Shown here one piece after another: positions 2,621-47,794 of a DNA stretch of 64,000 bases. The stretch covers positions 186,001-250,000 of the IMG/VR virus record IMGVR_UViG_3300013094_000017. One strand, 5' to 3'. The notes under the pieces were generated by a model. It saw nothing but the letters and a program-made list of their open reading frames with translations, did not search any database and had not been told where the DNA came from. Position 1 is the stretch's first letter, and each line of letters opens with the position of its first letter. Position numbers and translations under genes: made by a program.

Positions 2621-2649
2621 AGTAATGTTATTTATGGCTAAATATCTGT

Positions 2650-8570: not shown

Positions 8571-8586
8571 GCGACTAAATAATTGC

Positions 8587-34100: not shown

Positions 34101-34451
34101 CTAATCTAATCTACTGCCACCATAGGCCTTCAAGCCTAGCTCGTTAACTAATACTTCAGCGTAGGCATACGCACCCGCTTCCTTAACGCTAACGCTCTGC
34201 GTAGGATAGCCTGCTGGATCCCACAACTGTAAGCCTCCATTGTATGCTTTACGGAAGCCTACACTGGCTAACCACTTGCCCAACTTGCTGTTCGTGCGCA
34301 CATCGTATACAGTGACCCAACCAAAGCCACATGCATCACGCTCGCCTACCTTGCTGTACATGTCAGCAGCCGCTAGCTTGCTTACTGCTAGAGCCTTGGC
34401 TAATACTTGTTCTACGAAGTCTTGCTTTAGTTCAGTTGCTTTTAGTTCCAT
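34101..34451 (-). CDS. Early hypothetical protein
   Basis: Cassette leader; CGFGWV...TQSVSVKEAGAYAYA. Confidence 0.7.
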   Translation of the reverse strand: MELKATELKQDFVEQVLAKALAVSKLAAADMYSKVGERDACGFGWVTVYDVRTNSKLGKWLASVGFRKAYNGGLQLWDPAGYPTQSVSVKEAGAYAYAEVLVNELGLKAYGGSRLD

Positions 34452-34515
34452 TTTGTTTCTCCGTTGTGTTAGTGTATACGTAGTATAATATCAAACCTGC
34501 CAGCTGTCAACTACT

Positions 34516-34830
34516 TTATGCCAACTCCTTAAGCTCACGCTGTAGCTTCTTCAATTGCTTCTGTAAGTCCTTAAGCTTCACAGCCGCGCTAATATCAATC
34601 GCATGCTTAAACTTCTTATTCTCCCAATCTCTGTCACTAACAATAGCATCCACATACATGTCAACAATAGTCTTTAGTGTAGCGTTCCACTTAGCACCGT
34701 CTAAGCACGTGTCCCAACATTCAATCTCATACTTGTCTGCAATGTAGTCATCAAGCTCACTTAAGCGTTCAATCACTTCTGTTTCAATGTCGTTAGCTAC
34801 ATCGTCAATTGTTTTAATTTTCTTAGCCAT
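34516..34830 (-). CDS. Early hypothetical protein
   Basis: Cassette leader. Confidence 0.65.
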   Translation of the reverse strand: MAKKIKTIDDVANDIETEVIERLSELDDYIADKYEIECWDTCLDGAKWNATLKTIVDMYVDAIVSDRDWENKKFKHAIDISAAVKLKDLQKQLKKLQRELKELA

Positions 34831-34891
34831 TTTGTTTACCTCGTTGCGTTAGTGTCTGTGTAGTATACTATCGATTAAACCCTAAGTCAAC

Positions 34892-35086
34892 CTATTTCTT
34901 TACTCGAACAGTGAATAGACTGCCTAGTAGGGCTGTGGCTAACCAAGTGTTGAATGTGTAGGGAATAGCCAATGCGGGGAATAAAGTATCCAATGACCAT
35001 ATGGTTAAGATAGGTCCTAGAATGACTGCTAAGATACCTAATACTACTAGGCCTAGTACGCCAAAGGCTTTGGTGGATGATTTCAT
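34892..35086 (-). CDS. Early small membrane protein
   Basis: Two hydrophobic segments. Confidence 0.6.
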   Translation of the reverse strand: MKSSTKAFGVLGLVVLGILAVILGPILTIWSLDTLFPALAIPYTFNTWLATALLGSLFTVRVKK

Positions 35087-35385
35087 TAGTTTAGATCCTT
35101 ATGATAGAATTGGTCCATTTGGTATAGGCTCACACAGGTTAGTACGAGGATACCTAATAGTCCCAATGTTGAGGGTGTGTTAACTTCATATGCTATAAGA
35201 GCAAGTAGCAAGGCCTTGCTGGTATATATCTTAATCATTTAATTTCTCCTAGTGTTGTAATGCATGAGTGCATTATATAGTCTAAGCGGCCTTATGTCAA
35301 CTTCGGATGGCACGGATGCCTAGGGTGAGGATGAGGCCAAACACTAGGATCACTGCTATAGGTATTAGGGCTACTAGGTTGTACA

Positions 35386-35649
35386 TTATAATACTCCTTC
35401 TGATTCTAGTTCAGCTACTGCTTCGTTGAATAGGCTTTCTAGGTCGCGGACTTGGTTGGCCACTCTAATGTCTTTCCGACGCTTACGGAGTGCTGTGCCT
35501 TTCTGATACATTAAAGGGTGATGCAGTTTACAGTATACTGCACCATCCACTAGGTCCTTTGATCCACACTCGGTTGGATTATCGCCAAGCCATTGACATC
35601 CGAGTGCTCTAACCAGGGCTAGATCAAGTACCGGATTATTTGTTTTCAT
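35386..35649 (-). CDS. Early Zn-finger protein
   Basis: CQWLG...CG......YC..H (GcrA C-terminal-like finger). Confidence 0.6.
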   Translation of the reverse strand: MKTNNPVLDLALVRALGCQWLGDNPTECGSKDLVDGAVYCKLHHPLMYQKGTALRKRRKDIRVANQVRDLESLFNEAVAELESEGVL

Positions 35650-35872
35650 TGTTAACCATCTTCTTTACTAGTTTTTCAGTATCGATGCCCATATCTTTTA
35701 ATATGATCAGCATGACTGTTGATGTTTCTACTCGGCCGGCAGTGCGTTCCTGGTGTGCAATGATCACCAAGAGGGCAATCAAACTCCACCACTGCCAACC
35801 CCAACCTAAGTTGAGGGTGGCCAGTACTAGACCGTAGGTTAGATATAATGCTACGTTTAATATCTTATCCAT
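35636..35872 (-). CDS. Early small membrane protein
   Basis: Hydrophobic N-half; coupled. Confidence 0.55.
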   Translation of the reverse strand: MDKILNVALYLTYGLVLATLNLGWGWQWWSLIALLVIIAHQERTAGRVETSTVMLIILKDMGIDTEKLVKKMVNNENK

Positions 35873-36732
35873 TAGGCACGACGCATACAGGTTGTTGAAG
35901 CCATAGCCTGCCAGTTGCTGGGAAAGCTCTTGCGCAGGTCAGCTACCTTAAGTACCATGCGTAGGCTTAGCTCTCTGAGCTTGGCCGCGTTCACAGTGAT
36001 GAAGTTAACGATCTCATCTTTGGTCACCTGTTCAAACTCATAGTCATCTAACATACCTTCATTAACAATCTGCTTGATGCGCAGGATCTTCTCGCGGTCT
36101 GTGTCCATCTCTAAGTCGATGTAATGGCAACGACTTTCGAGCGCATCTAAGTGGTCCTTCAATCGTTTGCTTTTCACATGATGGAATTTAATATTAGTGA
36201 TAAAGATCGCCGCACCTTTGAACTCAAACCTGTCTGGAATGCCTTCACTGCGTAGCATACGGCTGTCAGTGTTCCAAGCAATGTATCGCTTCTTGCTACT
36301 ATCTAATGCGCCCTTGAGGATGTTAAGGCTAAGGTCTTCCATAAGAATACTGTCGCAGTCATCGAACACTATAACGTTGCCTTCGTCTGCGAATTCGTAT
36401 AACTTAGCATATAGTCCGAGGCTACTCATCGCACCTTTGACCACTTCGTATTTAGGTTTCTTATTACCTAACGTGTTGAATAGATCGTCCTTGCTGAGTA
36501 CTGCCTCAACACCAAAGCTCTTACCTACACCTGGGGGACCACTTACGATCATAGCACGTACATCGCCATGCTTGACTGCTTTGGTCATGTCAGTTAAGAT
36601 ACTGAAGCGAGCACTTAGGCGTTCAATGATCTCTTCGTCAGTCTCTAAAGCCACTGATAGTTCTAAGGCCTTAATCGCATCGGTATCAAACTCTAGTACT
36701 GATACGCCACCACTCTTATTTGCTTTTGCCAT
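35872..36732 (-). CDS. AAA+ ATPase
   Basis: SGPPGVGKS Walker A, IVFDDCD Walker B, IFITN, LESRC. Confidence 0.85.
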   Translation of the reverse strand: MAKANKSGGVSVLEFDTDAIKALELSVALETDEEIIERLSARFSILTDMTKAVKHGDVRAMIVSGPPGVGKSFGVEAVLSKDDLFNTLGNKKPKYEVVKGAMSSLGLYAKLYEFADEGNVIVFDDCDSILMEDLSLNILKGALDSSKKRYIAWNTDSRMLRSEGIPDRFEFKGAAIFITNIKFHHVKSKRLKDHLDALESRCHYIDLEMDTDREKILRIKQIVNEGMLDDYEFEQVTKDEIVNFITVNAAKLRELSLRMVLKVADLRKSFPSNWQAMASTTCMRRA

Positions 36733-36994
36733 TTGCTTTCCTTGTTTTGTTAGTGTAAGTGTGTATTATAACACCTAGCCTAGGCCTTGTCAACCACTTC
36801 TTTTTCAACAGTGGCGCCTGTATACTTCTGGCCTGCCTTGTGAATCAATCCCCAAGGATAGTATGTAATAGTTCCGCCCGAAGCAGAAGTTTTTGTAGTG
36901 CCTGGTGTGTTCATGTTATACTCCGAATACCAATTTGCCTAATAAGAACCCTGCAAAAAACAGGGCCACCCAACCTACTAAACGATCTCCCCAG

Positions 36995-37201
36995 TTAGGC
37001 TCCATAGTATTCTGCTCCTTCATCATACTCGTCGGCAGTGTCTTCGTCTTCTTCAAAGAAGCCTTCCAACTCAGTAGCGCAGAAGTCCTCGACAGCCGCT
37101 TCGCTCATTGTGGTCATTAAGCTGGTTGCCAACCACATTGGGTCAACGATGCCTTCTACCATTAGATCATAAAGCCTGTTAGTGTATTTGCGTGTTGCCA
37201 T
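36995..37201 (-). CDS. Early acidic hypothetical protein
   Basis: Cassette leader. Confidence 0.65.
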   Translation of the reverse strand: MATRKYTNRLYDLMVEGIVDPMWLATSLMTTMSEAAVEDFCATELEGFFEEDEDTADEYDEGAEYYGA

Positions 37202-37261
37202 TTTGTTTCTCCGTTGTGTTAGTGTAAGTGCATTATAGCAGGAGTTAGCCCAAATGTCAAC

Positions 37262-37417
37262 CTATGTTCTTGCTATGATAGCCTGTGAGTAGATGATAGA
37301 TCCCAGAACCTCTGCGGAGGAGGTCACTCCACCTTGTAGCTCCCAACCATTGGCCAAGGCTGCACGTATTTCCTTTTCAACCTCTGCTAAGGTACCTGTG
37401 ACAATCTTGTATCGCAT
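37262..37417 (-). CDS. DUF1737-like small protein
   Basis: Manual translation MRYKIVTGTLAEVEKEIRAALANGWELQGGV...YSQAII. Confidence 0.6.
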   Translation of the reverse strand: MRYKIVTGTLAEVEKEIRAALANGWELQGGVTSSAEVLGSIIYSQAIIART

Positions 37418-37418
37418 A

Positions 37419-37676
37419 TTAACCTTTCTCTGCTAGTTCCTGACACCAGACGCATCGTGTGCAGCCTAGGATGGCCTGTCTGCGAGGTTCCGGAATGGCC
37501 TCACCACAGTCCTCACACTCGGTTAGACTTGGTTGTGCCGCTTGCTCTGCTAGTCGACGCTGAACATCAGCTACCGCGTTCATGTTTAGGTGGATGGCGT
37601 GAATCTGGCCTAACTCTTCTTCGGCTCTGTTATCCATGAAGTTATCTTCTTGGTGCAATACATCTTTAGTTGTCAT
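37419..37676 (-). CDS. DksA/TraR-family C4 Zn-finger protein
   Basis: CEDCGEAIPEPRRQAILGCTRCVWCQ. Confidence 0.85.
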   Translation of the reverse strand: MTTKDVLHQEDNFMDNRAEEELGQIHAIHLNMNAVADVQRRLAEQAAQPSLTECEDCGEAIPEPRRQAILGCTRCVWCQELAEKG

Positions 37677-37812
37677 TAGATTTGCCTTTGTGTTTGGTCT
37701 TGCGGGTGAACTTGGTACGGTCCTTCTCTACCTTTGCTTTGAAAGGAAGATCCTTGTTGAATAGTGCATAGTGTCTGCGTACTGTCATTTTAATCTTTCT
37801 GCTCGTTTTCAT
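37666..37812 (-). CDS. Basic 48-aa protein, ArfA-like
   Basis: Manual translation ...LFNKDLPFKAKVEKDRTKFTRKTKHK; own promoter. Confidence 0.5.
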   Translation of the reverse strand: MKTSRKIKMTVRRHYALFNKDLPFKAKVEKDRTKFTRKTKHKGKSNDN

Positions 37813-37996
37813 AGTGTAAGTATTATACTACCTTAAACCTCTGATGTCAACCCCTAAATGAGGTCAAGAGAAAGCCCGCAACATGCAGGCTTTTTCTTAG
37901 GTCTAGCTATATGTTAGGTTTAGTAACTTTACATACCATGCCCTTTCTTCAAAATTGATTTAAGTGTTATCTCTTACTAAACTACATTATACTATC

Positions 37997-38440
37997 TTAA
38001 ACGAATCCTGTCAATGCTCGTTGGTATCGTTCCTCTTGGTGTCGTGCCCAACTCATCTCTAGGCCATGCTGTATACGCTCCCTATCAAACCATTCAGCTA
38101 GGGCAGGAAACTCGATTAACGGTAGTTCTATACCATAGTCATCTTCGAACCAATCTGTTCTGATCTTCCAGGTCTCTGGTACCAAGTTTCGATGCACACC
38201 GATGTTGGTTTCGATCATTAATCGTTTCCATTTGCGAACCAATGTGTTTATGGTATTGGTCCAATAGGTATTGGCCCATGTGTTTGGTTGTGTCCTGGAC
38301 AATGCTTCTCGAGCTTGGTCTAATCGAATGCCCAAGGCATCCAACTCATACTCAGTGGGGAATAGGTTCTTAGGTTCCCAATCGCCTAGATCTAAGGGCA
38401 ATACCACTGCCTCTGGCTCTTTAGGTTTAAACCAACGCAT
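37997..38440 (-). CDS. Early hypothetical protein
   Basis: 147-aa ORF. Confidence 0.6.
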   Translation of the reverse strand: MRWFKPKEPEAVVLPLDLGDWEPKNLFPTEYELDALGIRLDQAREALSRTQPNTWANTYWTNTINTLVRKWKRLMIETNIGVHRNLVPETWKIRTDWFEDDYGIELPLIEFPALAEWFDRERIQHGLEMSWARHQEERYQRALTGFV

Positions 38441-38711
38441 CTTCTAACTCCTCGGGAATGTCATTTAGGACCTTGCGCTTCTTAGTCTCTGCTATCAAGC
38501 AGGCCTGCACTTCTGCATTGCCGTTGGCAAAGCCTATGGCGAATAGGAATGCCAGTGCATCCTCTTTGGTGCTGGGATACTTAAGTTCCACTAGGTCGAT
38601 GTCCTTGTGTCCGCATTTGATTAGGATCTTTACTCGGTGATAACTGTTGGCATATCGAACTTTGAGTTTACCGTCGAGTCTACTAACGCCTGCGTGTGTG
38701 TATGATTTCAT
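38427..38711 (-). CDS. Early hypothetical protein
   Basis: YTHAGVSRLDGKLKVRYAN...IDLVEL. Confidence 0.65.
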   Translation of the reverse strand: MKSYTHAGVSRLDGKLKVRYANSYHRVKILIKCGHKDIDLVELKYPSTKEDALAFLFAIGFANGNAEVQACLIAETKKRKVLNDIPEELEDALV

Positions 38712-38766
38712 AGGTCTTTCCTGTTCTATCAGTGTATAGCTAGTATACTACCATTAGCCCAAAATG

Positions 38767-38940
38767 TCAATAGACTTCTTTGGTGATATAGAATACTTCC
38801 GCGGGATACTTCTCTTTGAACTCATCCGTGCCTGTGAACTTGTTCAGTTCAGTAGCATTGAAGAATACCTTATGCAATGCTGTCTTATGTGTCTTACGAT
38901 CACTGACCGTTAGATAAACTGATGTGGCGCGTCCTGCCAT
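38767..38940 (-). CDS. Early hypothetical protein (57 aa)
   Basis: Manual translation MAGRATSVYLTV...; its TGA stop lies inside the next -35 box. Confidence 0.6.
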   Translation of the reverse strand: MAGRATSVYLTVSDRKTHKTALHKVFFNATELNKFTGTDEFKEKYPAEVFYITKEVY

Positions 38941-38941
38941 G

Positions 38942-39139
38942 TTAGACCTCTTCTATTGAATGTGGAGGAAAGCTGAACTTCAAACTGTTCCTGCCTGTGT
39001 TGGCTGCCTCTGCACGTTTGAATGCTTCAAGTGCGCCTTCTTTAGTATCTGCTTCTACGACGATGTGATCAGTCTCAGTGTGGTTAAATTCATCCCATCC
39101 CGGCATCTCATATTCGTAGCGTACAATGTATCTTGCCAT
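38942..39139 (-). CDS. Early hypothetical protein
   Basis: Start at cassette ATG 39139. Confidence 0.65.
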   Translation of the reverse strand: MARYIVRYEYEMPGWDEFNHTETDHIVVEADTKEGALEAFKRAEAANTGRNSLKFSFPPHSIEEV

Positions 39140-39199
39140 TTTGTTTCTCCGTTGCGCTAGTGTATGTGTTATTATAGCATACACTAGCCCAAAAGTCAA

Positions 39200-39457
39200 C
39201 TAGTATTGCACCACACGCACAATCTGCGTTAAGTAAGCCCAACGCGGCTCACCTTTAGTGTCTGTGTAGTCACAACCTGCACGTCCATTCTTAATGTCTG
39301 CTTCTACGTTTTCTAACGTAACAGTTTCTGCAGGCTCACTGCCAAACCCACTGCGTATAACTACCACGCTACCTGCACGTACATCATCAATGTCAACGCC
39401 AGTGCCAGCAATGCCACTGCGTCTAATTGCGCTAATTAAATCTAATGTGTTGCTCAT
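39200..39457 (-). CDS. Early hypothetical (SH3-like) protein
   Basis: Start at cassette ATG 39457. Confidence 0.65.
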   Translation of the reverse strand: MSNTLDLISAIRRSGIAGTGVDIDDVRAGSVVVIRSGFGSEPAETVTLENVEADIKNGRAGCDYTDTKGEPRWAYLTQIVRVVQY

Positions 39458-39519
39458 TTTGTTTCTCCGTTTTGTTAGTGTAAGTGCATTATAGCGCATT
39501 TCTGCGCTATTGTCAACCA

Positions 39520-39729
39520 TTATTTTTCTTGCATTACAATGTTGTTAGTGCGTAATTGTTCTGCAGCCTGCGCAAATGCACGCACAACATCTTCTTCGTT
39601 GTTATAATCGCTACTAATAAAGCTAGCGTTACGTTGTGTTAGCGTGTCGTATGTAAAGCCTACAATAAGTCTAAACAGACCCTTGTTTGTTTTTAATACT
39701 TTTGCGTGTGCTAGTGTGTTTGTTTGCAT
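39520..39729 (-). CDS. Early hypothetical protein
   Basis: Cassette leader. Confidence 0.65.
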   Translation of the reverse strand: MQTNTLAHAKVLKTNKGLFRLIVGFTYDTLTQRNASFISSDYNNEEDVVRAFAQAAEQLRTNNIVMQEK

Positions 39730-39794
39730 TTGTGTTGCTCCGTTTTGTTAGTGTAAGTGCATTATAGCACCCACACTAACATTTGTCAACCTCT

Positions 39795-40064
39795 TTATGC
39801 CTGTACGCAGGTACCTCTGACCATGTGAAGGCTTCTGCGCCCAGTGCGTGTGCTGGCAGTTAACCCATGTGCATTTAACAATGCTTCCGTCCTTCCTGCT
39901 ACCTTCTCGCCTAGCCCGTGATATACCACCATGCCCACATAGCGTTTACTTTCCCAGGTGCGGTGGTTTGCGCTGTCAGTCCATGCCATGCCTAGCTCTG
40001 CGCCCAATTGTTTGGCCGCGGTTCTTACTGCATTACGGAATTCTAATGTGTTTGCTGTTTGCAT
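39795..40064 (-). CDS. Early hypothetical protein
   Basis: Cassette leader. Confidence 0.65.
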   Translation of the reverse strand: MQTANTLEFRNAVRTAAKQLGAELGMAWTDSANHRTWESKRYVGMVVYHGLGEKVAGRTEALLNAHGLTASTRTGRRSLHMVRGTCVQA

Positions 40065-40122
40065 TTGTTTCTCCATTTGTTTAGTGTAAGTGTATTATAA
40101 CACAGGTATTACCAAAAGTCAA

Positions 40123-40377
40123 CTATCTTTTGGGCCATATGGCGTCTAGAGTCTCTACCTTCTGGCGATTCATTTCCTGGGTGATCTGTTCGTCCTTACC
40201 ATATACTCGTTCGCGGTACATGCGTTCGAAGCAACGACCCAGACCTTCTGCACTCTTATTACCCCAGGAGGTTTCGTAGCGACCATCGTCATTGGTCTTT
40301 AGATCTAACATCTGGGCTATCTCTAGCCCAAATGCTTCTGCTTCTGCGGATGTAGAAAATTTACTTACGATCATCAC
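40123..40377 (-). CDS. Early hypothetical protein
   Basis: AGGAG RBS; GRYETSWGNKS. Confidence 0.6.
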   Translation of the reverse strand: MMIVSKFSTSAEAEAFGLEIAQMLDLKTNDDGRYETSWGNKSAEGLGRCFERMYRERVYGKDEQITQEMNRQKVETLDAIWPKR

Positions 40378-40382
40378 TGCTC

Positions 40383-40706
40383 CTATGCTAGGTTATAACG
40401 ATAGATGATGCCCTGTGGAGTAACCTTCTTAACAAAGCCCAGCTCTGTCCAGTCCTCTTCCAACCAAGCCAATGTCTTAGGATTCTTAAGCCATCCTCCA
40501 TCAATCTTAATGCTCACACCCTTCTTACCATATGCTTCATAAATTTTGCCAGTGGTAATCTCGCCTAATGCCACCATCATCGCATCAACTTGACGGCGTA
40601 GAGAAAATGGATAGTGACTCTTGTTGTTTAGATTGCGTTGACGAGCGTCTTGTGATGCCCACCATTTGTTTGGTGCTTCTTCAGTGTTGAGTAATAGTGT
40701 TTTCAT
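40383..40706 (-). CDS. Early hypothetical protein
   Basis: Cassette leader. Confidence 0.65.
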   Translation of the reverse strand: MKTLLLNTEEAPNKWWASQDARQRNLNNKSHYPFSLRRQVDAMMVALGEITTGKIYEAYGKKGVSIKIDGGWLKNPKTLAWLEEDWTELGFVKKVTPQGIIYRYNLA

Positions 40707-40878
40707 TTTGTTGCTCCGTTGTGTTAGTGTAAGTGCATTATAGCATAGGTATTACCTGTTGTCAACCCCTATCTTATGCCAAGAGAAAGGGCTGTGAACA
40801 ACATTATGTCCACAGCCCTTATGATAGGGTGGGCTTACCGTAAGCCACTACCTCACAAACCACACCCCACGGAGCAAC

Positions 40879-41319
40879 CTATGCAAAGTCTTTGTTATAT
40901 TGATTACGCTTTGCCTCACACTTGTCTTTAAACTCTGCCCAAGTGCCTGAAAAAATTACGTTGTCGTTGTTAGTGCCAACAGTGACAACCTCAACCTTGT
41001 TCTTGTAAACATGGTACTCATATTCCTGCCAATTGTCCACACCTGGCTTAGGTGGATACAAGTAGAACTGCCCTGGACCATCTTTAAAGTGTGCTACCAA
41101 CTGCGCGGCCAAACATCCCATACCATTGGCAACCTTTTCTGTCTTAGCACCCAAACCATTTACAATTGCAATTGGGCTAAGGAATTCAGCAAGCTCTAAA
41201 CCATGTCCTTCCATGTAGCCATCATATTGGCGATATAACTTAATGATTGGCGTGTGCTTCTCTTTGCCATTCTTTTGAGTGTAAGTGTCATAAACCCATG
41301 TTAAACTGCGTGTACCCAT
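40879..41319 (-). CDS. Early conserved phage protein (MGTRS... type)
   Basis: MGTRSLT..YRQYDGY..GHG..L, NGMGCLAAQLVAHFK. Confidence 0.7.
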   Translation of the reverse strand: MGTRSLTWVYDTYTQKNGKEKHTPIIKLYRQYDGYMEGHGLELAEFLSPIAIVNGLGAKTEKVANGMGCLAAQLVAHFKDGPGQFYLYPPKPGVDNWQEYEYHVYKNKVEVVTVGTNNDNVIFSGTWAEFKDKCEAKRNQYNKDFA

Positions 41320-41400
41320 TTTGCTTCTCCGTGTTGTTAGTGTAAGTGCATTATAGCACCCCCTAGGGGTTTTGTCAACCCCTTTAAGCGGGGTCTTACT

Positions 41401-41835
41401 CTAGGAGTCTTGTTCTTCTTCCTCGTACTCAGGTTCATCGTACGGTGGGTCAGTGTCAATAACAACCTTACCGAATGTAAGCTCAGCACCATCACTGCCT
41501 ACTGCAAACTGCTCTTCGAAGTCTACTACGTTGCCACCTTCCATCCATAGGCTGTCCGAAGTATCGTTGATGTCACTAAGTAGGATACACCCAATGCCAC
41601 CTGCATCCACAGGATACTCACGGCCTTGCTCATCCTCATAGTTACCATCACCGTGGGCGGTACTGAAGTAAGCAAAGCGAACACCATTGGCTAATTTGAA
41701 TACACCTTGTGCACCGCGCCAGTTGTCTTGTCCCTTAGGAAAGAACAGCTCACACGCTTCTTGCCACTGTGGGTGCATTACATAGCACAAGTCACCGATC
41801 CAATACTTTCCTGCTGGCATAGTTCCGTAATTCAT
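41401..41835 (-). CDS. Early hypothetical protein
   Basis: YWIGDLCYV...TAHGDG.Y...VDAGGIG. Confidence 0.7.
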   Translation of the reverse strand: MNYGTMPAGKYWIGDLCYVMHPQWQEACELFFPKGQDNWRGAQGVFKLANGVRFAYFSTAHGDGNYEDEQGREYPVDAGGIGCILLSDINDTSDSLWMEGGNVVDFEEQFAVGSDGAELTFGKVVIDTDPPYDEPEYEEEEQDS

Positions 41836-41897
41836 TTTGTTTCTCCGTTGTGTTAGTGTAAGTACATTATAACATCGGTATTACCACTTGTCAACCC

Positions 41898-42113
41898 CTA
41901 GATAGCATCAGCCTCTTCAACGTTATACTGCGTGATGTCGTCCTCAAGGATCTCAATAGCCGTCACACGCACTTCGTTATCAGTGGTCATACCGCCGAGG
42001 ACATTCTTGTAGTCCAAGAGTTCTTGTGCATACTCAAGAGCCTGGTCTCGGTTATCGAACGGTTCGTCGTGTGTGATCTCAGCACGCACTGTGGTGTAGA
42101 TGACTGTCTTCAT
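41898..42113 (-). CDS. Early hypothetical protein
   Basis: Coupled ORF. Confidence 0.6.
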   Translation of the reverse strand: MKTVIYTTVRAEITHDEPFDNRDQALEYAQELLDYKNVLGGMTTDNEVRVTAIEILEDDITQYNVEEADAI

Positions 42114-42316
42114 TCTGCTGTCTCCATTGACATCTCTTGCAAGCGGTCATACGCATTAACAAAGTCCTCGCAAAGCAGACGCATACGATGCATAGCCTGC
42201 TCTTCGCTGTCGCTTAGGCCAATGTCTTCAAAGTCGTAACCGTCTTCTAGAACATTAACGCAATCGCGCAAATCACCTAAGGTGTTTTCGAACCTGCAAT
42301 AACTCATATTAGCCAT
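42110..42316 (-). CDS. Early hypothetical protein
   Basis: MANMSYCRFENT..DL; cassette leader. Confidence 0.7.
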   Translation of the reverse strand: MANMSYCRFENTLGDLRDCVNVLEDGYDFEDIGLSDSEEQAMHRMRLLCEDFVNAYDRLQEMSMETAE

Positions 42317-42378
42317 TTTGTTTCTCCGTTGTGTTAGTGTAAGTGCATTATAGCAGGTAAAACCTGCTATGTCAACCC

Positions 42379-42579
42379 CTAATTAGCAAACTCTTCTATG
42401 CAATCTAATACTTCTTCTAACTGCATAATAACATCTTCGATGTTGTTGTGGATAGTGTAGCAGACATCCTCGTCTTCAGGAAGTGCATCTTTGTAGACTG
42501 CAAATGCTTTCTGTTGCAAGCGGTTTGCAGTGTGAAGTGCTTCGATAGCGGCTTCTAGGTGTTGTTTGGCTAGTGACAT
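42379..42579 (-). CDS. Early hypothetical protein
   Basis: Cassette leader. Confidence 0.65.
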   Translation of the reverse strand: MSLAKQHLEAAIEALHTANRLQQKAFAVYKDALPEDEDVCYTIHNNIEDVIMQLEEVLDCIEEFAN

Positions 42580-42634
42580 AATGTTTCTCCGTTGTGTTAG
42601 TGTAAAGCTATTATAGCACCAATGGTAAAACCTG

Positions 42635-42856
42635 TCAACCGATATAGTGAACTATTAATCCAACTACGCCTGTGAGCAGCATCACACCGTTCACAACGAT
42701 TAAGCTGGCCTTGCGCCATTCTATAGCTATAGCAAACCATATAGCACCGCCTACGCACAGCAACAGGGGCCCTTGTGGGTAGTATCCTAAGCTGTTAACT
42801 GCTGTGCCAACGATTAAGATCGTTGTAGCTATCCATTCTAATATTAAGATTCTCAT
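42635..42856 (-). CDS. Small 3-TM membrane protein
   Basis: Start ATG 42856; three hydrophobic helices. Confidence 0.6.
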   Translation of the reverse strand: MRILILEWIATTILIVGTAVNSLGYYPQGPLLLCVGGAIWFAIAIEWRKASLIVVNGVMLLTGVVGLIVHYIG

Positions 42857-43437
42857 ATGTCTAAAGTACTTCCTAATCCTTTGTGATAGAACAAATGTTG
42901 TCCCACCTTGGTTATATACTGCGTACGGTCTGCCCAAGCCGGCGATACATATGATGCATGATACATTAAAGCCTGCTGTAGGGGTCTTACACGTACCTTA
43001 TCCACCAGCACGCTATGCGCAATCATTTGACTCTCAGCCCACAACACACCCTTGGGCTTGTCCAACTTCTTCTTAAGTGTCCACGAGAACTGTGCCTTTG
43101 CGTGGACTACCTTGCACACACTGTTACCCCAATGGCCCGTCTTGAGTCTGTTTAAGGTTACCTGTGCAACTGCGTATTTGCCCTGCACCGGCTCCACCCC
43201 AGCTTCGTAGTATACATTCTCTGCTAGACAAGTCAAGTCATTTTTTGTGTAATGGACATTCTCATCTGTCTGCACAAGAAAAGCCTTGATCTCACGGACC
43301 TCATTGTGGACCTCAGTGATCTCACGTTGCTGGAACGACAGCAATGCTACCACTGCCGTTCCAGTTGCCGCTATGAGTAAATTACTCTTCGTCAACACTG
43401 TCTGCTTCCCACATCTCTTGGTTTTCGGAGATGGCAA
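42853..43437 (-). CDS. Cell wall hydrolase SleB/Hydrolase_2
   Basis: CLAENVYYEAG, AVAQVTLNR, QFSWT, ALMYHA, VGQHLFY; exact start uncertain. Confidence 0.85.
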   Translation of the reverse strand: MPSPKTKRCGKQTVLTKSNLLIAATGTAVVALLSFQQREITEVHNEVREIKAFLVQTDENVHYTKNDLTCLAENVYYEAGVEPVQGKYAVAQVTLNRLKTGHWGNSVCKVVHAKAQFSWTLKKKLDKPKGVLWAESQMIAHSVLVDKVRVRPLQQALMYHASYVSPAWADRTQYITKVGQHLFYHKGLGSTLDI

Positions 43438-43954
43438 AAGTATCGTCTAACTCTTGCGGTAGTTGATCACGAGCGCCTTGTGCATCACCCCAGTCTTGGT
43501 AGTAGTCATCATTGCCGTCTTGATAGATGCCAGCGAACTGCATACCACCTTCATAGTAGTAGCCAAGCACATCAAAGCCCGCTTCTTCCAAGAACGCATA
43601 AGCGCCTACTGGCGGAGCCCAAGCACTGTCAAAGTGCAGGGTGATGCTGTGGAAGCCGTCAATGGTCTCATTGATCTCGTAGTATTCATCCTCACTGCCA
43701 ACATCCCACTTGGTTCCCCAATTGCTCACGCACCAGTCATACCAAGTGCTGTAGCCATATTTCTCAAGGTTGGCTTCATATAGGGCCTGTAGTTCAGCAT
43801 CATCAGTACCTGGAGCACTGGTGATCATCAAAGCCTCGGGCACAGGAGCGAACTCCTGTAGCAATACCCCACGCTTAAAGGCCTCTTCGACACGCTGGAT
43901 CTGACCAGCATCTTTGTGAGTAAGTGTTACGATATTCTGGCACCAGTTTGGAAT
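43382..43954 (-). CDS. YubB/DUF1281-like ferredoxin-fold protein; ATT start
   Basis: (I)PNWCQNIV...WYDWCVSNWGTKWD...FDSAWAPP; in-frame TAG 4 codons upstream of ATT. Confidence 0.75.
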   Translation of the reverse strand: MPNWCQNIVTLTHKDAGQIQRVEEAFKRGVLLQEFAPVPEALMITSAPGTDDAELQALYEANLEKYGYSTWYDWCVSNWGTKWDVGSEDEYYEINETIDGFHSITLHFDSAWAPPVGAYAFLEEAGFDVLGYYYEGGMQFAGIYQDGNDDYYQDWGDAQGARDQLPQELDDTFAISENQEMWEADSVDEE

Positions 43955-44022
43955 TTTGGGTTCCTACCTTTCTTAATTTGTTAGTGTAAGTGCATTATAG
44001 CACCTTTCGGTGCTATGGTCAA

Positions 44023-44277
44023 CTAGCATTCGTAAAGTTTAACTCCAGGATCTAACTGCTTCAACTCATTCGCCGCCTGTGTTAGAAACTTAAAATTCCT
44101 ACGAACAGTGGCCGCATCTAGCTCGCCATCACAGGTCAAGTTCTCTGGTGATAGTTTGCCATCGATGATATCTGCAATGTGTTGTCGGTCTTGGGCAGTG
44201 GCCAACGACAGAGGTTTATTCCCCCATATGGCACGCCATTGGTTTTCTGCTTGGATAAAGGACTTTAGTGTTTTCAT
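44023..44277 (-). CDS. Early hypothetical protein
   Basis: LSPENLTCDGE motif; cassette leader. Confidence 0.7.
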   Translation of the reverse strand: MKTLKSFIQAENQWRAIWGNKPLSLATAQDRQHIADIIDGKLSPENLTCDGELDAATVRRNFKFLTQAANELKQLDPGVKLYEC

Positions 44278-44343
44278 TACGTTTCTCCGTGTTGTTAGTG
44301 TAAGTGCATTATAGCACCTACACTAATCTCTGTCAACCTCTAT

Positions 44344-44616
44344 CTAGGCCATCTCTACCATGTTAGCAGGCACACGCCAAGCACCTTGTGGTGTATCGAT
44401 AACGATGTTCTTAATAGCGATCTTCTTAACGGTGCCTCGAATGGTTTGACGGCTACGGCTTGAAGTAAACTGGACAGCGTCACCTACACGGAATGTTCTT
44501 AGGTTCAATCGAGCGTTACGGCTTCGGACATACTTGATTGACTCTACGATTGAGTTGATATCCGCATCAGTCAATTCTGAAGTTAGGATTAGTTCATTGA
44601 TTTTGGCTACTGACAT
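44344..44616 (-). CDS. Early SH3-like protein
   Basis: FRVGDAVQF...GTVKKI...WRVP. Confidence 0.65.
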   Translation of the reverse strand: MSVAKINELILTSELTDADINSIVESIKYVRSRNARLNLRTFRVGDAVQFTSSRSRQTIRGTVKKIAIKNIVIDTPQGAWRVPANMVEMA

Positions 44617-44669
44617 AGTCTGCTCCTTAAGTGTTTAAGTGTGTAGTATAACATCGGTATTACCAAATG

Positions 44670-44951
44670 TCAACCTAAAAAGAATTCAATCTCTTTAATA
44701 AGATCTTCCTTCACTGGCTTGTCTTCGTCGCCATGCACATACGCGGCGAACTCCTCTTCATGCCAGCGTTCAAATGTGCTAGTCATTAGCCAATTGAATA
44801 TCTTTTCTGCTGACTCCTGCTTAACCTTAGCGCGGAACGCTTCCAATGCCTTAGCACTGTCGCCTTCTGTCCAGTAGGTAAGTCCGTCTTGCTCAACTAG
44901 CAGGCCTGCTTCGATTGCTAGTTGTTCTGTTGCGGAAAAGGTTGTGCTCAT
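44670..44951 (-). CDS. Early hypothetical protein
   Basis: AAGGAG RBS. Confidence 0.6.
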   Translation of the reverse strand: MSTTFSATEQLAIEAGLLVEQDGLTYWTEGDSAKALEAFRAKVKQESAEKIFNWLMTSTFERWHEEEFAAYVHGDEDKPVKEDLIKEIEFFLG

Positions 44952-45075
44952 GCCATTACTCCTTGTTTAACCTTGCGCCAATCCCAACGTGCCTGTGTGT
45001 ATGCACGACGGCTAAGTGTAAAGCCTGGGCAGTTCTTGCAGGCCCAAGCTACGAAGTGAACTTGCTCTACGTTAC

Positions 45076-45231
45076 TCATAAGCCACAAGCCTCGTAGAAG
45101 CGTCCATAGTCAAAGCGACTGTTCATTGCCTTAGCAACATCTGCAAAAGCCTTAGCCGCTTGCTTGCGTGCATCCAAGTCTGCGATACCTGCTAGTTCTT
45201 TTGCCATTGCAATAAAGTGTTTACGTGACAT
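45076..45231 (-). CDS. Early 51-aa protein
   Basis: Manual translation MSRKHFIAMA...NSRFDYGRFYEACGL; cassette leader. Confidence 0.65.
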   Translation of the reverse strand: MSRKHFIAMAKELAGIADLDARKQAAKAFADVAKAMNSRFDYGRFYEACGL

Positions 45232-45284
45232 CTTGTGTTTCTCCGTTTTGTTAGTGTGTAGCTATTATAACACCGGTTTTACCT

Positions 45285-45530
45285 TTAGTCAACCTCAATT
45301 AACTTTAATTCGTAGAACATATCCTGCGCCAAGTCTACGCTGACAAAGTCAATAGCATACTCTTCGCCACTCTCTTCACCTGTACCGTAGAAGCGACCTG
45401 TACTGAGATCCTCTCCCAGATCTAATAAGTCCTGGTCAGTATCCCAATAGTCAATGCGGATGCCCTCGCAATTGAATGGAACATACACTGCGGCACGGCC
45501 TACGATCTCTTTAACCTTATCTAAGCTCAT
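45285..45530 (-). CDS. Early acidic hypothetical protein
   Basis: Coupled ORF. Confidence 0.6.
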   Translation of the reverse strand: MSLDKVKEIVGRAAVYVPFNCEGIRIDYWDTDQDLLDLGEDLSTGRFYGTGEESGEEYAIDFVSVDLAQDMFYELKLIEVD

Positions 45531-45913
45531 ACCTTCTCCTTTGCAACAATCTTAGGTTCACGTCCACTGCCATCGCTGATGTAGCCTAACACTAAGGTCT
45601 CCATAGCCCGCTTAGCCTCTTGCACGGCTTCCCAAGCAAGGTCTTCTGCGGTGCCGTCTTTGAATACTTCCATGGCATCCTCGTACAAGAAGCCACCTAC
45701 ATAAGCATCACCTAGCTCGATGTCCTTGTAGTAGGCCACAGCGCGAAGCATGAACCAATCTAATTCATACGCATCAATCTTGCGACAAAGGTCTTCAACG
45801 TCTGTTACAGTGTCATCAAAGCAGTCTCTGGGGCTAATATCTTCCCAGGACTTTTCGATCTTAACAGTAAAGCCATCCATTTCAAGCTGGCCTAGTGTTT
45901 CCCAATGGCGCAT
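45527..45913 (-). CDS. Early hypothetical protein
   Basis: Cassette leader. Confidence 0.65.
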   Translation of the reverse strand: MRHWETLGQLEMDGFTVKIEKSWEDISPRDCFDDTVTDVEDLCRKIDAYELDWFMLRAVAYYKDIELGDAYVGGFLYEDAMEVFKDGTAEDLAWEAVQEAKRAMETLVLGYISDGSGREPKIVAKEKV

Positions 45914-45967
45914 ATCATTCTCCGTTTGTTTAGTTTAAGTGCATTATAGCACAGGTATTACCAAAGG

Positions 45968-46129
45968 TCAATCCCAAAATTTATTAATAATCTCTTCTGC
46001 TTCCCTCATAGCACCATCAAAGTCACCAGCACCTAAGCAGAAGATCTCTCCGCTGTAGTGTAAGCACCAGCAGTTCAAGTGTAGATCAAATTCTACATCG
46101 TAACCAGTTTCTAATACATGTACAGCCAT
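45968..46129 (-). CDS. Early small protein
   Basis: AAGGAG RBS before ATG 46129. Confidence 0.55.
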   Translation of the reverse strand: MAVHVLETGYDVEFDLHLNCWCLHYSGEIFCLGAGDFDGAMREAEEIINKFWD

Positions 46130-46139
46130 AATATTCTCC

Positions 46140-46307
46140 TTATAAACTTGCGGTATCAATTTCTACGTCCGCTAGGACAATAGTAACATCCCACGGCTTC
46201 TTAGCACCTAGTAGGCCTGCTGCGAGTCTTTGTGCGGCAAAGCTAGACTCTGCTTTCACTTCAATCTTCTTGCTCTTGTAGAACGCTATATACATATATG
46301 TTCGCAT
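46140..46307 (-). CDS. Early 55-aa protein
   Basis: Manual translation MRTYVYIAFYKSKKIEVKAESSFAAQ...; cassette leader. Confidence 0.6.
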   Translation of the reverse strand: MRTYMYIAFYKSKKIEVKAESSFAAQRLAAGLLGAKKPWDVTIVLADVEIDTASL

Positions 46308-46447
46308 AGTGTACTCCTTGTTGTTAGTGTGTAAACATTATAGCGTAGGTTTTTCCATTTGTCAAGCATTATATTGGTAATATTTTGGTTGACAGGTATT
46401 ACCAGCGATGCTATACTACGTATACACTAACAACACGGAGAACTAAA

Positions 46448-46647: not shown

Positions 46648-46856
46648 TGGGAGTAGGTACGCAGGACACATCCTACTCCCCCGTCCTGCTTGTTTTGGGC
46701 TAACATAGGCCACTACCTAACCACTGATCAGAACGTGGTCGCAGGTTAACACAGGCGCGGCATCACTATGTATAGCCTCATAGGGTTTCCTATAGGAGCA
46801 ATCGATCAGCATCCTCCTAACTCTCTCCCTCTTTATGCCTGACGTTCACGGTTTAC
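46648..46856 (-). ncRNA. Candidate structured ncRNA downstream of tRNA
   Basis: No credible ORF; multiple stems and a 9-bp + 7-bp H-type pseudoknot. Confidence 0.45.
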
Positions 46857-46933
46857 TGGTGCTCCGTCAGGGATTCGAACCCTGCCTCCCACGTTATGAG
46901 CATGGTACTCTCTACCTAGTGAGTTACCAGAGC
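46857..46933 (-). tRNA. tRNA with CAU anticodon (elongator Met or Ile2)
   Basis: GCTCTGG acceptor, ACTC/GAGT D stem, CCATG-CTCATAA-CGTGG, CAGGG-TTCGAAT-CCCTG, encoded ACCA. G1-C72 pair and no 3GC anticodon stem, so not initiator-type. sigma70 promoter upstream. Confidence 0.9.
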
Positions 46934-46985
46934 AAAAACTTATACATTAATAATACTATATCTATTCAGTTTTGTCAACTGTTAG

Positions 46986-47706
46986 TGGGCCTACCTTGAC
47001 TCGAACTAAATACTATTATGAAACTAGAACTTACTCCGCAGCGTATTGCAGCTAACAAAAAGAACTGCCTACTAGGAGGAGCAGCATTTGCCGCTAAAAT
47101 GTCATCAGCATATAATGCTAATCCCAGCTATTGTAATCAATGCAGCACTATATTACCTCAGAGCAAGAAAAACAATAAATTCTGTAATTCCTCTTGTTCT
47201 GCAAAATATAGCAATGCACGCAAGGACTATTCAAAGTTCACACCAGGACCTGTTCCTAAACCTAAAGATCCTACAGCGGGGTCAGCACCCTATAGTACAT
47301 TATTCCGTTGTGAGTGTAAACATTGCGGAGTAATTAAGCTGTATCGATCTCAAACCAAGTATTGTCCTGAACACAGGGATCTTTATAGCCACGCAGGCCG
47401 AGCTAAGTATTGGTTCACATTTAACGTGTTTCATTACCCTGATCTGTTTGATCTAAACTGGGTTAACTCTGTGGGATTTCGAAGCTCTTCTAATCCCAAT
47501 GGAGTTACTAGGGATCATAAAGTAAGTGTCAATGACGCCATTCGAAACAACTATGATCCCTATTACATAAAGCACGTACTCAACTGTGAGCTAATGCTAT
47601 TCGCTGAAAATAATAAAAAGAAAACCAAGTCCTCTATCACCTATGCAGAGCTAGTCATACAAGTTAACCTGTATGATCAGTCTCTGACCAACTGAGCTAC
47701 AGGCCC
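46986..47706 (-). pseudogene. tRNA (Ile-like) split by HNH endonuclease insertion
   Basis: 5' half GGGCCTGTAGCTCAGTTGGTCAGAG (47706-47682); 3' half GTTCGAGTCAAGGTAGGCCCA (47006-46986); anticodon arm absent. Confidence 0.75.
47018..47695 (+). mobile_element. HNH homing endonuclease with N-terminal Zn fingers
   Basis: CNQC...FCNSSC, CKHC...YCPEH, TRDHKVSV...NCELMLFAENNKK; TAAATA 4 nt before ATG. Confidence 0.75.
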
Positions 47707-47716
47707 TAAAACTACA

Positions 47717-47794
47717 GTGTGAGATCCCAAAGTATCCTTATGGGACGATTTATCTATCCGCTGCGCAGTACTATGTACATCGCCAATCTCACAC
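47717..47794 (-). ncRNA. Candidate 78-nt three-way-junction RNA under perfect late promoter
   Basis: 9-bp terminal stem GTGTGAGAT/ATCTCACAC; TATAAATA 5 nt upstream. Confidence 0.5.

What the first reader, a model, noticed from the sequence alone, without database searches (positions are those of the whole stretch)
46986..47706. HNH endonuclease gene has replaced the anticodon arm of a tRNA gene
Seen: on the - strand a tRNA 5' half (acceptor strand and D arm, 47706-47682) and 3' half (T loop and acceptor strand, 47006-46986) whose acceptor strands still pair (GGGCCTG/TAGGCCC). Between them is an antisense 225-aa HNH ORF whose TAAATA promoter abuts the T loop and whose stop codon lies inside the D arm. 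About 28 nt, including the anticodon arm, are missing. Inference: a homing endonuclease used a conserved tRNA as its target. The halves may still fold and be processed, as a tRNA-like decoy or a way to excise the antisense HNH RNA.
Basis: partly seen in the sequence, partly recalled or inferred. Interest (0 to 1): 0.72.

Follow-up and report, generated by a model that had tools for sequence, protein, structure and literature searches.

The report
tRNA gene split by homing-endonuclease gene
A freshwater jumbo phage carries a dead tRNA gene whose middle was replaced by a selfish HNH-type nuclease gene from an unnamed family found almost only in phage tRNA clusters; this is a known kind of element in an unusual position, and the leftover tRNA pieces look like scars, not working parts.

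Summary
On the minus strand, 47706-47682 is letter for letter the first 25 nt of intact tRNA(CAU) genes in other viral contigs. 47006-46986 is a T loop plus an acceptor 3' strand that pairs with it. Positions 25-52 (28 nt, including the anticodon arm) are missing. The antisense 225-aa ORF between them is real: 11 synonymous versus 1 non-synonymous change against a relative, and it has the phage's usual TAAATA-N5-ATG start signal. It has an HNH-like DH...N...N motif and a weak HNH fold match, but no Pfam hit.

Its family (over 200 proteins, PHROG 23051, function unknown) lies within 400 nt of a tRNA gene in 32 of 36 loci. It is usually antisense, with its stop abutting a tRNA and an orphan T-loop remnant beside its start.

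The 850-bp block from tRNA-Met to the 5' remnant is 98% identical to that of a relative whose flanks are 74-85% identical. Erwinia phages supply alleles with and without a homologue. So the homing-endonuclease reading is supported, and it resembles T4 SegB.

The idea that the halves still function is not supported: they change at about the synonymous rate and decay or vanish in relatives. No allele lacking the gene was found for this lineage. Cleavage is untested.

The parts
47682..47706 (-). 5' remnant of a tRNA(CAU) gene, Ile2/Met type: acceptor 5' strand, D arm to position 24.
   Evidence: The exact 25-mer is shared with intact tRNA(CAT) genes in other viral contigs. The sequence was read.
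47018..47695 (+). 225-aa ORF of an unannotated HNH-like endonuclease family. It has zinc-binding Cys clusters and a C-terminal DH...N...N motif. It is antisense to the tRNA remnants.
   Evidence: ORF. PHROG 23051 at 4e-48. 208 homologues. Invariant C39, C42, C56, C60, C100, C103, C116, D166, H167, N189, N198. 11 synonymous versus 1 non-synonymous change against the relative. 16 of the 17 structural matches with Z of 2 or more are HNH nucleases.
47007..47012 (+). TAAATA motif 5 nt upstream of the ATG. It is the phage's own gene-start (probably promoter) signal.
   Evidence: TAAATA-N4-6-ATG occurs 25 times in the 259-kb genome. 20 of those sites open an ORF of at least 60 aa, against 21% of random ATGs. 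The motif is conserved before the ATG in most homologue loci.
46986..47006 (-). 3' remnant of the same tRNA: G53, T loop, T stem 3' strand, acceptor 3' strand and discriminator. No CCA.
   Evidence: Read. It pairs 7 of 7 with the 5' remnant. Homologous but diverged remnants sit at the same place in L030, L033, L036, L037 and L041.
46950..46978 (-). Sigma-70-type promoter (TTGACA, 17 nt, TATTAT) that serves the downstream tRNA-Met. It lies between the 3' remnant and that gene.
   Evidence: 11 of 12 match to consensus. It is conserved in L030 and L033.
46857..46933 (-). Intact tRNA-Met(CAU) with a canonical T loop. It is linked to the endonuclease gene in this subfamily.
   Evidence: ARAGORN. 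Rfam 47.6 bits. The same neighbour is present in L025-L034.
46857..47706 (.). 850-bp block (tRNA-Met, promoter, 3' remnant, ORF, 5' remnant) recently exchanged between phage lineages.
   Evidence: 98% identical (17 differences) to L025-L029, whose flanks are 74-85% identical. The block ends at the tRNA-Met CCA on one side and about 8 nt before the 5' remnant on the other. The relative carries it in two different right-hand contexts.

Best explanation
The region is a tRNA(CAU) pseudogene interrupted by a free-standing homing-endonuclease gene.

Shown:
- The two tRNA pieces are real.
- 28 nt, including the anticodon arm, are missing.
- The ORF between them is a conserved protein under purifying selection, with an HNH-type motif.
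- Its family lives in phage tRNA arrays.
- The whole block has recently moved between phage lineages.

Inferred:
- The protein is made from the TAAATA start signal, probably late in infection.
- During co-infection it cuts a related genome that lacks the gene, at or near a tRNA gene. The T-loop region is the likeliest site, as for T4 SegB.
- Repair copies the endonuclease gene and its neighbours (here the linked tRNA-Met) into the cut genome.
- The tRNA pieces are scars carried along inside the mobile block and have no function of their own.

Which history produced the split is open. Either the gene was inserted directly, replacing positions 25-52, or the family's usual layout (full tRNA, gene, 3' remnant) later lost tRNA positions 25-76.
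For: tRNA pieces and the missing part.

The gene is real:
- 11 synonymous versus 1 non-synonymous change.
- More than 200 homologues with invariant Cys, DH, N and N residues.
- A genome-wide start signal.

HNH-like:
- Strand-DH, N-strand and helix-N layout in a confident model (pLDDT 88.9).
- 16 of the only 17 PDB chains with Z of 2 or more are HNH nucleases.
- Foldseek top hits are mostly HNH, although all have E above 1.
- The nearest language-model clusters carry PF01844.

tRNA association:
- 32 of 36 homologue loci have a tRNA within 400 nt.
- In 16 loci the stop abuts a tRNA.
- An orphan T-loop motif lies beside the start in 9 of 37 loci, against 3.9% of control windows (p = 1e-5).

Mobility:
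- The block is 98% identical while the flanks are 74-85% identical, and it sits in two right-hand contexts.
- pEa_SNUABM_47 lacks the homologue that BF and pEa_SNUABM_19, 12, 44 and 49 have, within flanks about 97% identical.

Precedent: SegB recognises the T-psi-C motif and cuts at the 3' ends of tRNA genes (PMC2330249).
Against: - No Pfam HNH model matches, and the structural Z scores are low (3.5 or less).
- No allele without the gene, and no intact copy of this tRNA at this site, was found for this lineage. I looked in viral contigs, metagenome contigs and four sequencing runs.
- Both tRNA pieces lie inside the exchanged block, so present-day spread need not involve cutting an intact copy of this tRNA.
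- The genome has some 20 tRNA genes with canonical T loops, including the adjacent tRNA-Met. Recognition of the T loop alone would therefore cut the phage's own DNA.
- Nuclease activity and target are untested.
Confidence: 0.8

Rival explanations
1. The two halves are still functional. They pair through the acceptor stem to form a tRNA-like structure that is processed (RNase P/Z). It could act as a decoy, or as a device to cut out or destabilise the antisense transcript of the nuclease gene.
For: - The minimum-energy fold of the 733-nt minus-strand RNA closes the acceptor stem.
- The 5' piece is 23 of 25 identical in the 70%-identity homologue locus L030, more than the 68% DNA identity of the gene.
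- In L025 the changes at 7:66 and 6:67 keep pairing.
Against: - There is no anticodon arm, and the T stem has one mismatch and two G-T pairs.
- There is no Rfam or ARAGORN signal.
- L027 has a T-T mismatch at 7:66.
- L030's 3' piece is 16 of 24 identical and has no T stem.
- L033 lacks the 5' piece, and remnants in BF, GAP32 and others are decayed.
- The halves change at about the synonymous rate.
- tRNA-Met has its own promoter downstream of the remnant.
Confidence: 0.06
2. The split did not arise by insertion into the tRNA. The ancestor had the family's usual layout: a full tRNA(CAU), the antisense nuclease gene abutting its 3' end, and a duplicated 3' remnant beyond the gene's start. A later deletion removed tRNA positions 25-76. 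This is a rival history, not a rival identity.
For: - Subfamily members L036 and L041 have exactly that layout, with GGGCC-type acceptor stems and matching ...GGCC(C/T)A remnants. L037 has a 5' remnant plus a full tRNA.
- The gene-side junction (just after the YD codons) is the same in the window as in loci where a full tRNA abuts the stop.
Against: - The deletion would have to end exactly at the tRNA/gene boundary.
- The window and L030 share the tRNA-side breakpoint (24/25) but differ by 27 nt on the gene side. That fits one old event plus later change under either history.
Confidence: 0.35
3. The insert is an intron (group I or II) in a tRNA gene, with an antisense endonuclease ORF. Splicing would restore a tRNA.
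For: - tRNA(CAU) genes are known hosts of group I introns (my own knowledge, not checked here).
- The insert lies within a tRNA.
Against: - No intron family is found even at E up to 10.
- The ORF fills nearly the whole insert on the opposite strand.
- Joining the flanks would give a tRNA lacking 28 nt.
Confidence: 0.01
4. The ORF is not a nuclease but a zinc-finger DNA- or RNA-binding regulator of the tRNA region. The block similarity reflects ordinary recombination.
For: - No Pfam HNH hit. The only domain-level sequence matches are zinc fingers.
- Fold scores are weak.
Against: - D166, H167, N189 and N198 are invariant in a strand-strand-helix arrangement.
- The structural matches are almost exclusively HNH nucleases.
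- Patchy presence among near-identical phages and position at exchange boundaries are typical of homing endonuclease genes.
Confidence: 0.1

Closest known systems
T4 SegB, a free-standing GIY-YIG homing endonuclease in the T4 tRNA cluster (PMC2330249)
   Same: - A selfish nuclease gene inside a phage tRNA array.
- SegB recognises the conserved T-psi-C motif GGTTCRANTCC and cuts at the 3' ends of tRNA genes.
- It carries neighbouring tRNA genes along with it.
- In the family studied here the stop abuts tRNA 3' ends, T-loop remnants flank the gene, and a linked tRNA-Met travels with it.
   Different: - A different nuclease fold: HNH-like with zinc fingers, and no GIY-YIG motif.
- Mostly antisense to the tRNAs.
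- Here it sits inside a tRNA gene and destroys it.
- Its cleavage site is unknown.
T5 F-TflI/II/IV and CBB_420: HNH endonuclease genes in or beside phage tRNA genes (mentioned in PMC2330249 and PMC5259590)
   Same: HNH-type genes located in tRNA regions. [quoted passage not shown]
   Different: - Those proteins match Pfam HNH models (HNH_3 for CBB_420). This family matches none.
- There was no detectable sequence relation in a profile comparison, apart from a zinc ribbon.
I-HmuI-type HNH nicking homing endonucleases
   Same: A DH...N...N catalytic pattern (from my own knowledge of I-HmuI). I-HmuI appears among weak Foldseek matches.
   Different: I-HmuI is intron-encoded, in a protein-coding gene. 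There is no significant sequence or fold score here.
Integrase-borne elements that insert into tRNA genes and duplicate the 3' end
   Same: In many family loci a tRNA 3' segment (T loop to CCA) is found on both sides of the inserted gene.
   Different: There is no integrase. The element is a single small gene in a lytic-type jumbo phage. In the window the tRNA is not restored.
Group I introns in tRNA(CAU)/tRNA-Leu genes and archaeal split tRNA genes
   Same: A tRNA gene interrupted by a long insert, with two halves whose acceptor strands pair.
   Different: There is no ribozyme. 28 nt of tRNA are missing, and no complementary leader or trailer exists to join the halves.

Membership tests
HNH (beta-beta-alpha-metal) endonuclease superfamily | Conserved catalytic His (usually DH or HH) at the end of strand 1, Asn in strand 2, and Asn/His in the following helix. 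| tested here: met
   D166, H167, N189 and N198 are invariant in 28 homologues of 42-70% identity. They lie at strand 163-167, strand 190-194 and helix 195-201 of the model.
HNH (beta-beta-alpha-metal) endonuclease superfamily | Significant match to a curated HNH sequence model. | tested here: not met
   No Pfam HNH family at E up to 1 for the protein or for any of the 28 homologues. The PHROG hits annotated HNH align only to the zinc-finger part.
HNH (beta-beta-alpha-metal) endonuclease superfamily | Fold similarity to solved HNH domains. | tested here: inconclusive
   16 of the 17 chains with Z of 2 or more, out of 48,161, are HNH nucleases. But the best Z is 3.5 and Foldseek E values are above 1.
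HNH (beta-beta-alpha-metal) endonuclease superfamily | Metal-dependent DNA cleavage. | not testable with these tools
   Needs purified protein.
Free-standing homing endonuclease gene | Patchy presence or absence among closely related genomes at the same site. | tested here: met
   Met for the homologue in Eneladusvirus: present in BF and pEa_SNUABM_19, 12, 44 and 49, absent in pEa_SNUABM_47 and the Yersinia phage fHe-Yen9-04 (the Yen9-03 locus is shorter and was not fully resolved). For the window's own lineage no allele lacking the gene was found.
Free-standing homing endonuclease gene | The gene plus adjacent DNA is more similar between genomes than the surrounding genome is (recent transfer, co-conversion). 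| tested here: met
   46857-47706 is 98% identical to L025-L029, whose flanks are 74-85% identical.
Free-standing homing endonuclease gene | Cleaves the allele that lacks it and is over-inherited in mixed infection. | not testable with these tools
   Needs enzyme assays and phage crosses.
Functional tRNA gene | Complete cloverleaf with an anticodon arm. | tested here: not met
   Not called by ARAGORN, even with introns allowed, or by Rfam. Positions 25-52 are absent compared with intact genes.
tRNA gene with a self-splicing intron | Ribozyme core in the insert, and exons that join to a whole tRNA. | tested here: not met
   No intron family at E up to 10. The joined flanks lack 28 nt.
SegB / GIY-YIG family | N-terminal GIY-YIG motif. 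| tested here: not met
   No such Pfam or PHROG match, and no such motif in alignment A1. It may work like SegB but is not a member.

The most novel reading that the evidence does not exclude
This unnamed HNH-like family uses the universally conserved tRNA T-loop region as a general homing site, and phage tRNAs answer with a compensating swap of T-loop positions 54 and 58 (TTCRA to ATCRT) that keeps the tRNA working but blocks cutting. That would be an arms race written into jumbo-phage tRNA sequences. Leads: 9 of 16 tRNAs abutting the gene's stop have non-canonical T loops, against 25 of 142 other tRNAs in the same loci (p = 0.0014, not corrected for relatedness). The abutting tRNA-Met reads ATCGTAG in four Erwinia/Serratia phages that carry the gene, and TTCAAGT in the sister phage that lacks it. 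Against: two phages with the gene keep the canonical loop, and one phage without it has the swap.
Probability: 0.25. Interest if true: 0.7.

Novelty: new variant of a known kind. Interest (0 to 1): 0.45.

Why it matters
Homing endonuclease genes in phage tRNA clusters are known (SegB in T4, the T5 enzymes). This work adds a large, unannotated nuclease family: more than 200 members, no Pfam model, PHROG 'unknown function'. Its members sit in the tRNA arrays of jumbo phages, from Lak phages to Erwinia, Serratia and Cronobacter phages, where they are annotated as hypothetical proteins.

The window shows the family's most destructive layout, a tRNA gene cut in two.

If the T-loop targeting and the 54/58 swap hold up, they would explain odd T loops and the rapid turnover of tRNA sets in large phages. 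The cultured Erwinia phages provide natural allele pairs with and without the gene, so the idea can be tested directly.

Tried and rejected
- Megablast of the region against GenBank phages found nothing.
- I searched for an allele lacking the gene, or an intact copy of the tRNA at this site. I used a neighbouring protein, the tRNA-Met sequence and the 3' remnant as probes in viral and metagenome contigs, and laid contigs of four runs on the window. Only the same phage, the 98% block in the relative, or unrelated matches turned up.
- The single RNA run covered only 46689-46844, so it says nothing about transcription of the halves.
- L077 has a similar 3' two-thirds of a tRNA(CAT) at a contig end. 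It could not be interpreted.
- Sequence and profile searches of the PDB returned only zinc-finger matches.
- Whole-protein fold searches were dominated by the N-terminal helix, so I re-modelled the C-terminal domain alone.
- A profile comparison with the HNH_3 protein CBB_420 matched only a zinc ribbon.
- The spacer of pEa_SNUABM_47 looked by eye like a tRNA-like gene that the nuclease gene replaced in BF. Rfam gives no tRNA there at E up to 10, so this stays a lead.
- I did not build a covariance model of the halves. The 5' piece was selected by exact match, so a score would be circular, and Infernal cannot bridge a 680-nt insert.
- I considered the intron and chance explanations and rejected both.

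Full report
**Setting.** The window is bases 186001-250000 of a 259-kb virus record, estimated 73% complete. Runs and contigs that hold it come from lake and pond metagenomes. Its proteins resemble those of 350-kb jumbo phages such as GAP32 and Serratia phage BF. The only near-identical record is another contig of the same phage, at 99.9%.

**The observation.** On the minus strand, 47706-47682 reads as a tRNA acceptor 5' strand plus D arm. The exact 25-mer occurs at the start of intact 74-77-nt tRNA genes with anticodon CAT in other viral contigs. Their anticodon arms and the C4-G69/C5-G68 pairs suggest the lysidine-type tRNA-Ile2, but that assignment rests on my own knowledge and was not tested.

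- The similarity stops after position 24.
- 47006-46986 reads G53, T loop TTCGAGT, T stem 3' strand, acceptor 3' strand and discriminator. The acceptor strands pair 7 of 7.
- Positions 25-52 (28 nt) are missing, and the remaining T stem pairs poorly.
- ARAGORN (with or without introns) and Rfam call nothing here. Rfam finds no intron family at E up to 10.

**The ORF.** 47018-47695 (+) encodes 225 aa. Its stop lies in the complement of the D arm.

- Pfam gives nothing. PHROG 23051 (function unknown) matches at 4e-48.
- The large protein collection holds 208 relatives with no Pfam domain on record, bar one with a zinc finger.
- An alignment of 28 relatives shows invariant Cys clusters (C39, C42, C56, C60; C100, C103, C116). 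The first cluster resembles an FCS/MYM zinc finger. Many homologues have an extra N-terminal C2H2 finger.
- The C-terminal block has invariant R165, D166, H167, N189 and N198.
- The model of the C-terminal domain is confident (pLDDT 88.9). It places DH at the end of a strand, N189 before the next strand and N198 in the following helix.
- Of 48,161 PDB representatives, only 17 reach Z of 2 or more, and 16 of those are HNH nucleases: Cas9, IscB and Cap5 HNH domains, BrxU, the Gme HNH nickase and T5 SciA. The best Z is only 3.5. Foldseek E values are above 1.
- I therefore call the protein HNH-like. The motif criterion is met, the sequence-model criterion is not met, and the fold criterion is inconclusive.

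The gene is functional. Against the relative described below it differs by 11 synonymous and 1 non-synonymous change.

TAAATA, 5 nt before the ATG, is a real signal of this phage. TAAATA-N4-6-ATG occurs 25 times in the genome, and 20 of those sites open an ORF of at least 60 aa, against 21% for random ATGs. The same motif precedes the ATG in most homologue loci.

**Family context.** I examined 36 homologue loci from GenBank phages and IMG/VR.

- 32 have a tRNA gene within 400 nt of the ORF.
- The commonest layout is antisense to the tRNA array. The ORF's stop abuts or runs into the 3' end of a complete tRNA in 16 loci. This is why many C-terminal tails read like antisense T arms.
- Just beyond the ORF's start lies an orphan T-loop-to-3'-end remnant. 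A strict T-loop motif occurs there in 9 of 37 loci, against 3.9% of control windows (p = 1e-5). Decayed versions are visible in several more.
- In the window's own subfamily the remnant is homologous across loci. L036 and L041 have a full GGGCC-type tRNA(CAT), the gene, then the remnant. L037 has a 5' remnant, a full tRNA-Met, the gene and the remnant. L033 has no 5' piece. L030 (protein 70% identical) has the same split as the window, with the same tRNA-side breakpoint (24/25) but 27 extra nt on the gene side.
- So the split is old and shared. Whether it began as an insertion replacing positions 25-52, or as a deletion from the full-tRNA layout, is open.

**Mobility.** A relative found in European assemblies (L025-L029) has flanks 74-85% identical to the window. 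The 850 bp from the CCA of tRNA-Met (46857) to the 5' end of the split tRNA (47706) are 98% identical, and the relative carries this block in two different right-hand contexts.

In cultured phages, BF and pEa_SNUABM_19, 12, 44 and 49 carry a homologue between two tRNA-Met genes. pEa_SNUABM_47, about 97% identical in the flanks, lacks it, and so do more distant relatives. At the corresponding GAP32 site, phage CBB carries an unrelated HNH gene.

These are the standard signatures of free-standing homing endonuclease genes. The closest studied case is T4 SegB, which recognises the T-psi-C motif, cuts at the 3' ends of tRNA genes and drags neighbouring tRNA genes along.

**Are the halves functional?** The evidence says no.

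- Between the window and the relative, the halves carry 3 changes in 46 nt. That is about the rate suggested by the ORF's 11 synonymous changes (roughly 7% on my estimate of about 160 synonymous sites). The intact tRNA-Met carries none.
- Position 7 is G, A or T in three variants, and one of these mismatches its partner.
- L030's 3' piece is 16 of 24 identical and forms no T stem. L033 has lost the 5' piece.
- tRNA-Met has its own strong promoter between the remnant and the gene.
- The predicted fold does close the acceptor stem, and the 5' piece is 23 of 25 identical in L030. I keep a small probability for a role.

**A lead beyond the finding.** tRNAs that abut the gene's stop often have unusual T loops: 9 of 16, against 25 of 142 other tRNAs in the same loci (Fisher p = 0.0014). 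Five have ATCRT, a swap of positions 54 and 58 that could preserve their pairing.

The abutting tRNA-Met reads ATCGTAG in BF and pEa_SNUABM_19, 12 and 49. It reads TTCAAGT in pEa_SNUABM_47, which lacks the gene. However, pEa_SNUABM_44 and GAP32 (both with the gene) are canonical, and CBB (without it) has the swap. The cases are related to one another, so this is a hypothesis and not a result.

**Verdict.** The homing-endonuclease reading is well supported in kind but untested in mechanism. The functional-halves idea is unsupported. This is a new variant of a known kind.

Noticed in passing
L018:122-749 (IMGVR_UViG_3300038299_000132): Another viral contig has the same 25-mer tRNA(CAT) start, broken in the anticodon loop after position 33. 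A codirectional 167-aa ORF with a GIY-YIG-like N terminus follows and runs into the next tRNA. No intron family was detected. This is a second kind of nuclease gene splitting the same type of tRNA.
   Followed up: partly
L015:363-520 (IMGVR_UViG_3300008116_001718): The same tRNA(CAT) start is intact through the anticodon arm and then breaks off at about position 44. No nuclease-like ORF is nearby.
   Followed up: partly
window 46857 boundary; L025:4726-4839: The relative has an extra tRNA-Arg(TCT) plus a 39-nt spacer directly after the CCA of tRNA-Met. Both versions resume with the same letters after a CCA, so a whole tRNA cassette has been gained or lost precisely at tRNA ends.
   Followed up: partly
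window 47717-47794 (- strand): A roughly 78-nt stretch just upstream of the 5' remnant is closed by a 9-bp stem (GTGTGAGAT / ATCTCACAC). It is 79% conserved in relatives L025 and L026 and absent from L027-L029. There is no Rfam match. Its function is unknown.
   Followed up: no
window 47655-47676: A 22-nt near-perfect palindrome centred on GTTAAC lies inside the last codons of the ORF. It is present in the window and its 98% relative but not in more distant homologues.
   Followed up: no
whole genome G000, e.g. window 2638-2652 and 8575-8589: TAAATA-N4-6-ATG marks about 20 gene starts, often ending in TATG. This suggests a promoter so close to the ATG that the transcripts would be nearly leaderless. 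Several of these genes look like other mobile nucleases, including one with a GIY-YIG-like and one with an HNH-like N terminus.
   Followed up: partly
G000:C1 218-291, 1162-1236, 1987-2061 (outside the window) and many loci: T loops beginning ATCG(T/A) instead of TTCRA occur in 3 of 22 tRNAs of this genome. The strict ATCRT form occurs in about 7% of the other tRNAs in the homologue loci.
   Followed up: partly
window about 34448-46375, many sites (e.g. 40693-40771, 41833-41905, 45229-45294, 46299-46375): A dispersed repeat of about 60-75 nt recurs between the small minus-strand genes and is shared with the relative's intergenic regions. It is probably a repeated promoter or terminator module.
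   Followed up: no
L040:1400-1500, L043, L097, L099 (upstream of the ORF start): One subgroup of the family has, instead of a plain T-loop remnant, a conserved leader of about 90 nt with two hairpins (GGGACAGCC...GGTTTC...ATTACCA on the antisense strand) and a normal ribosome-binding site. It could be a regulatory leader or another tRNA-derived remnant.
   Followed up: no
L085:675-845 (Erwinia phage pEa_SNUABM_47): The spacer that the nuclease gene replaces in BF ends in a T-arm-like hairpin, an acceptor-like strand and CCA, with a complementary 5' strand about 100 nt upstream. Neither ARAGORN nor Rfam calls it a tRNA.
   Followed up: partly
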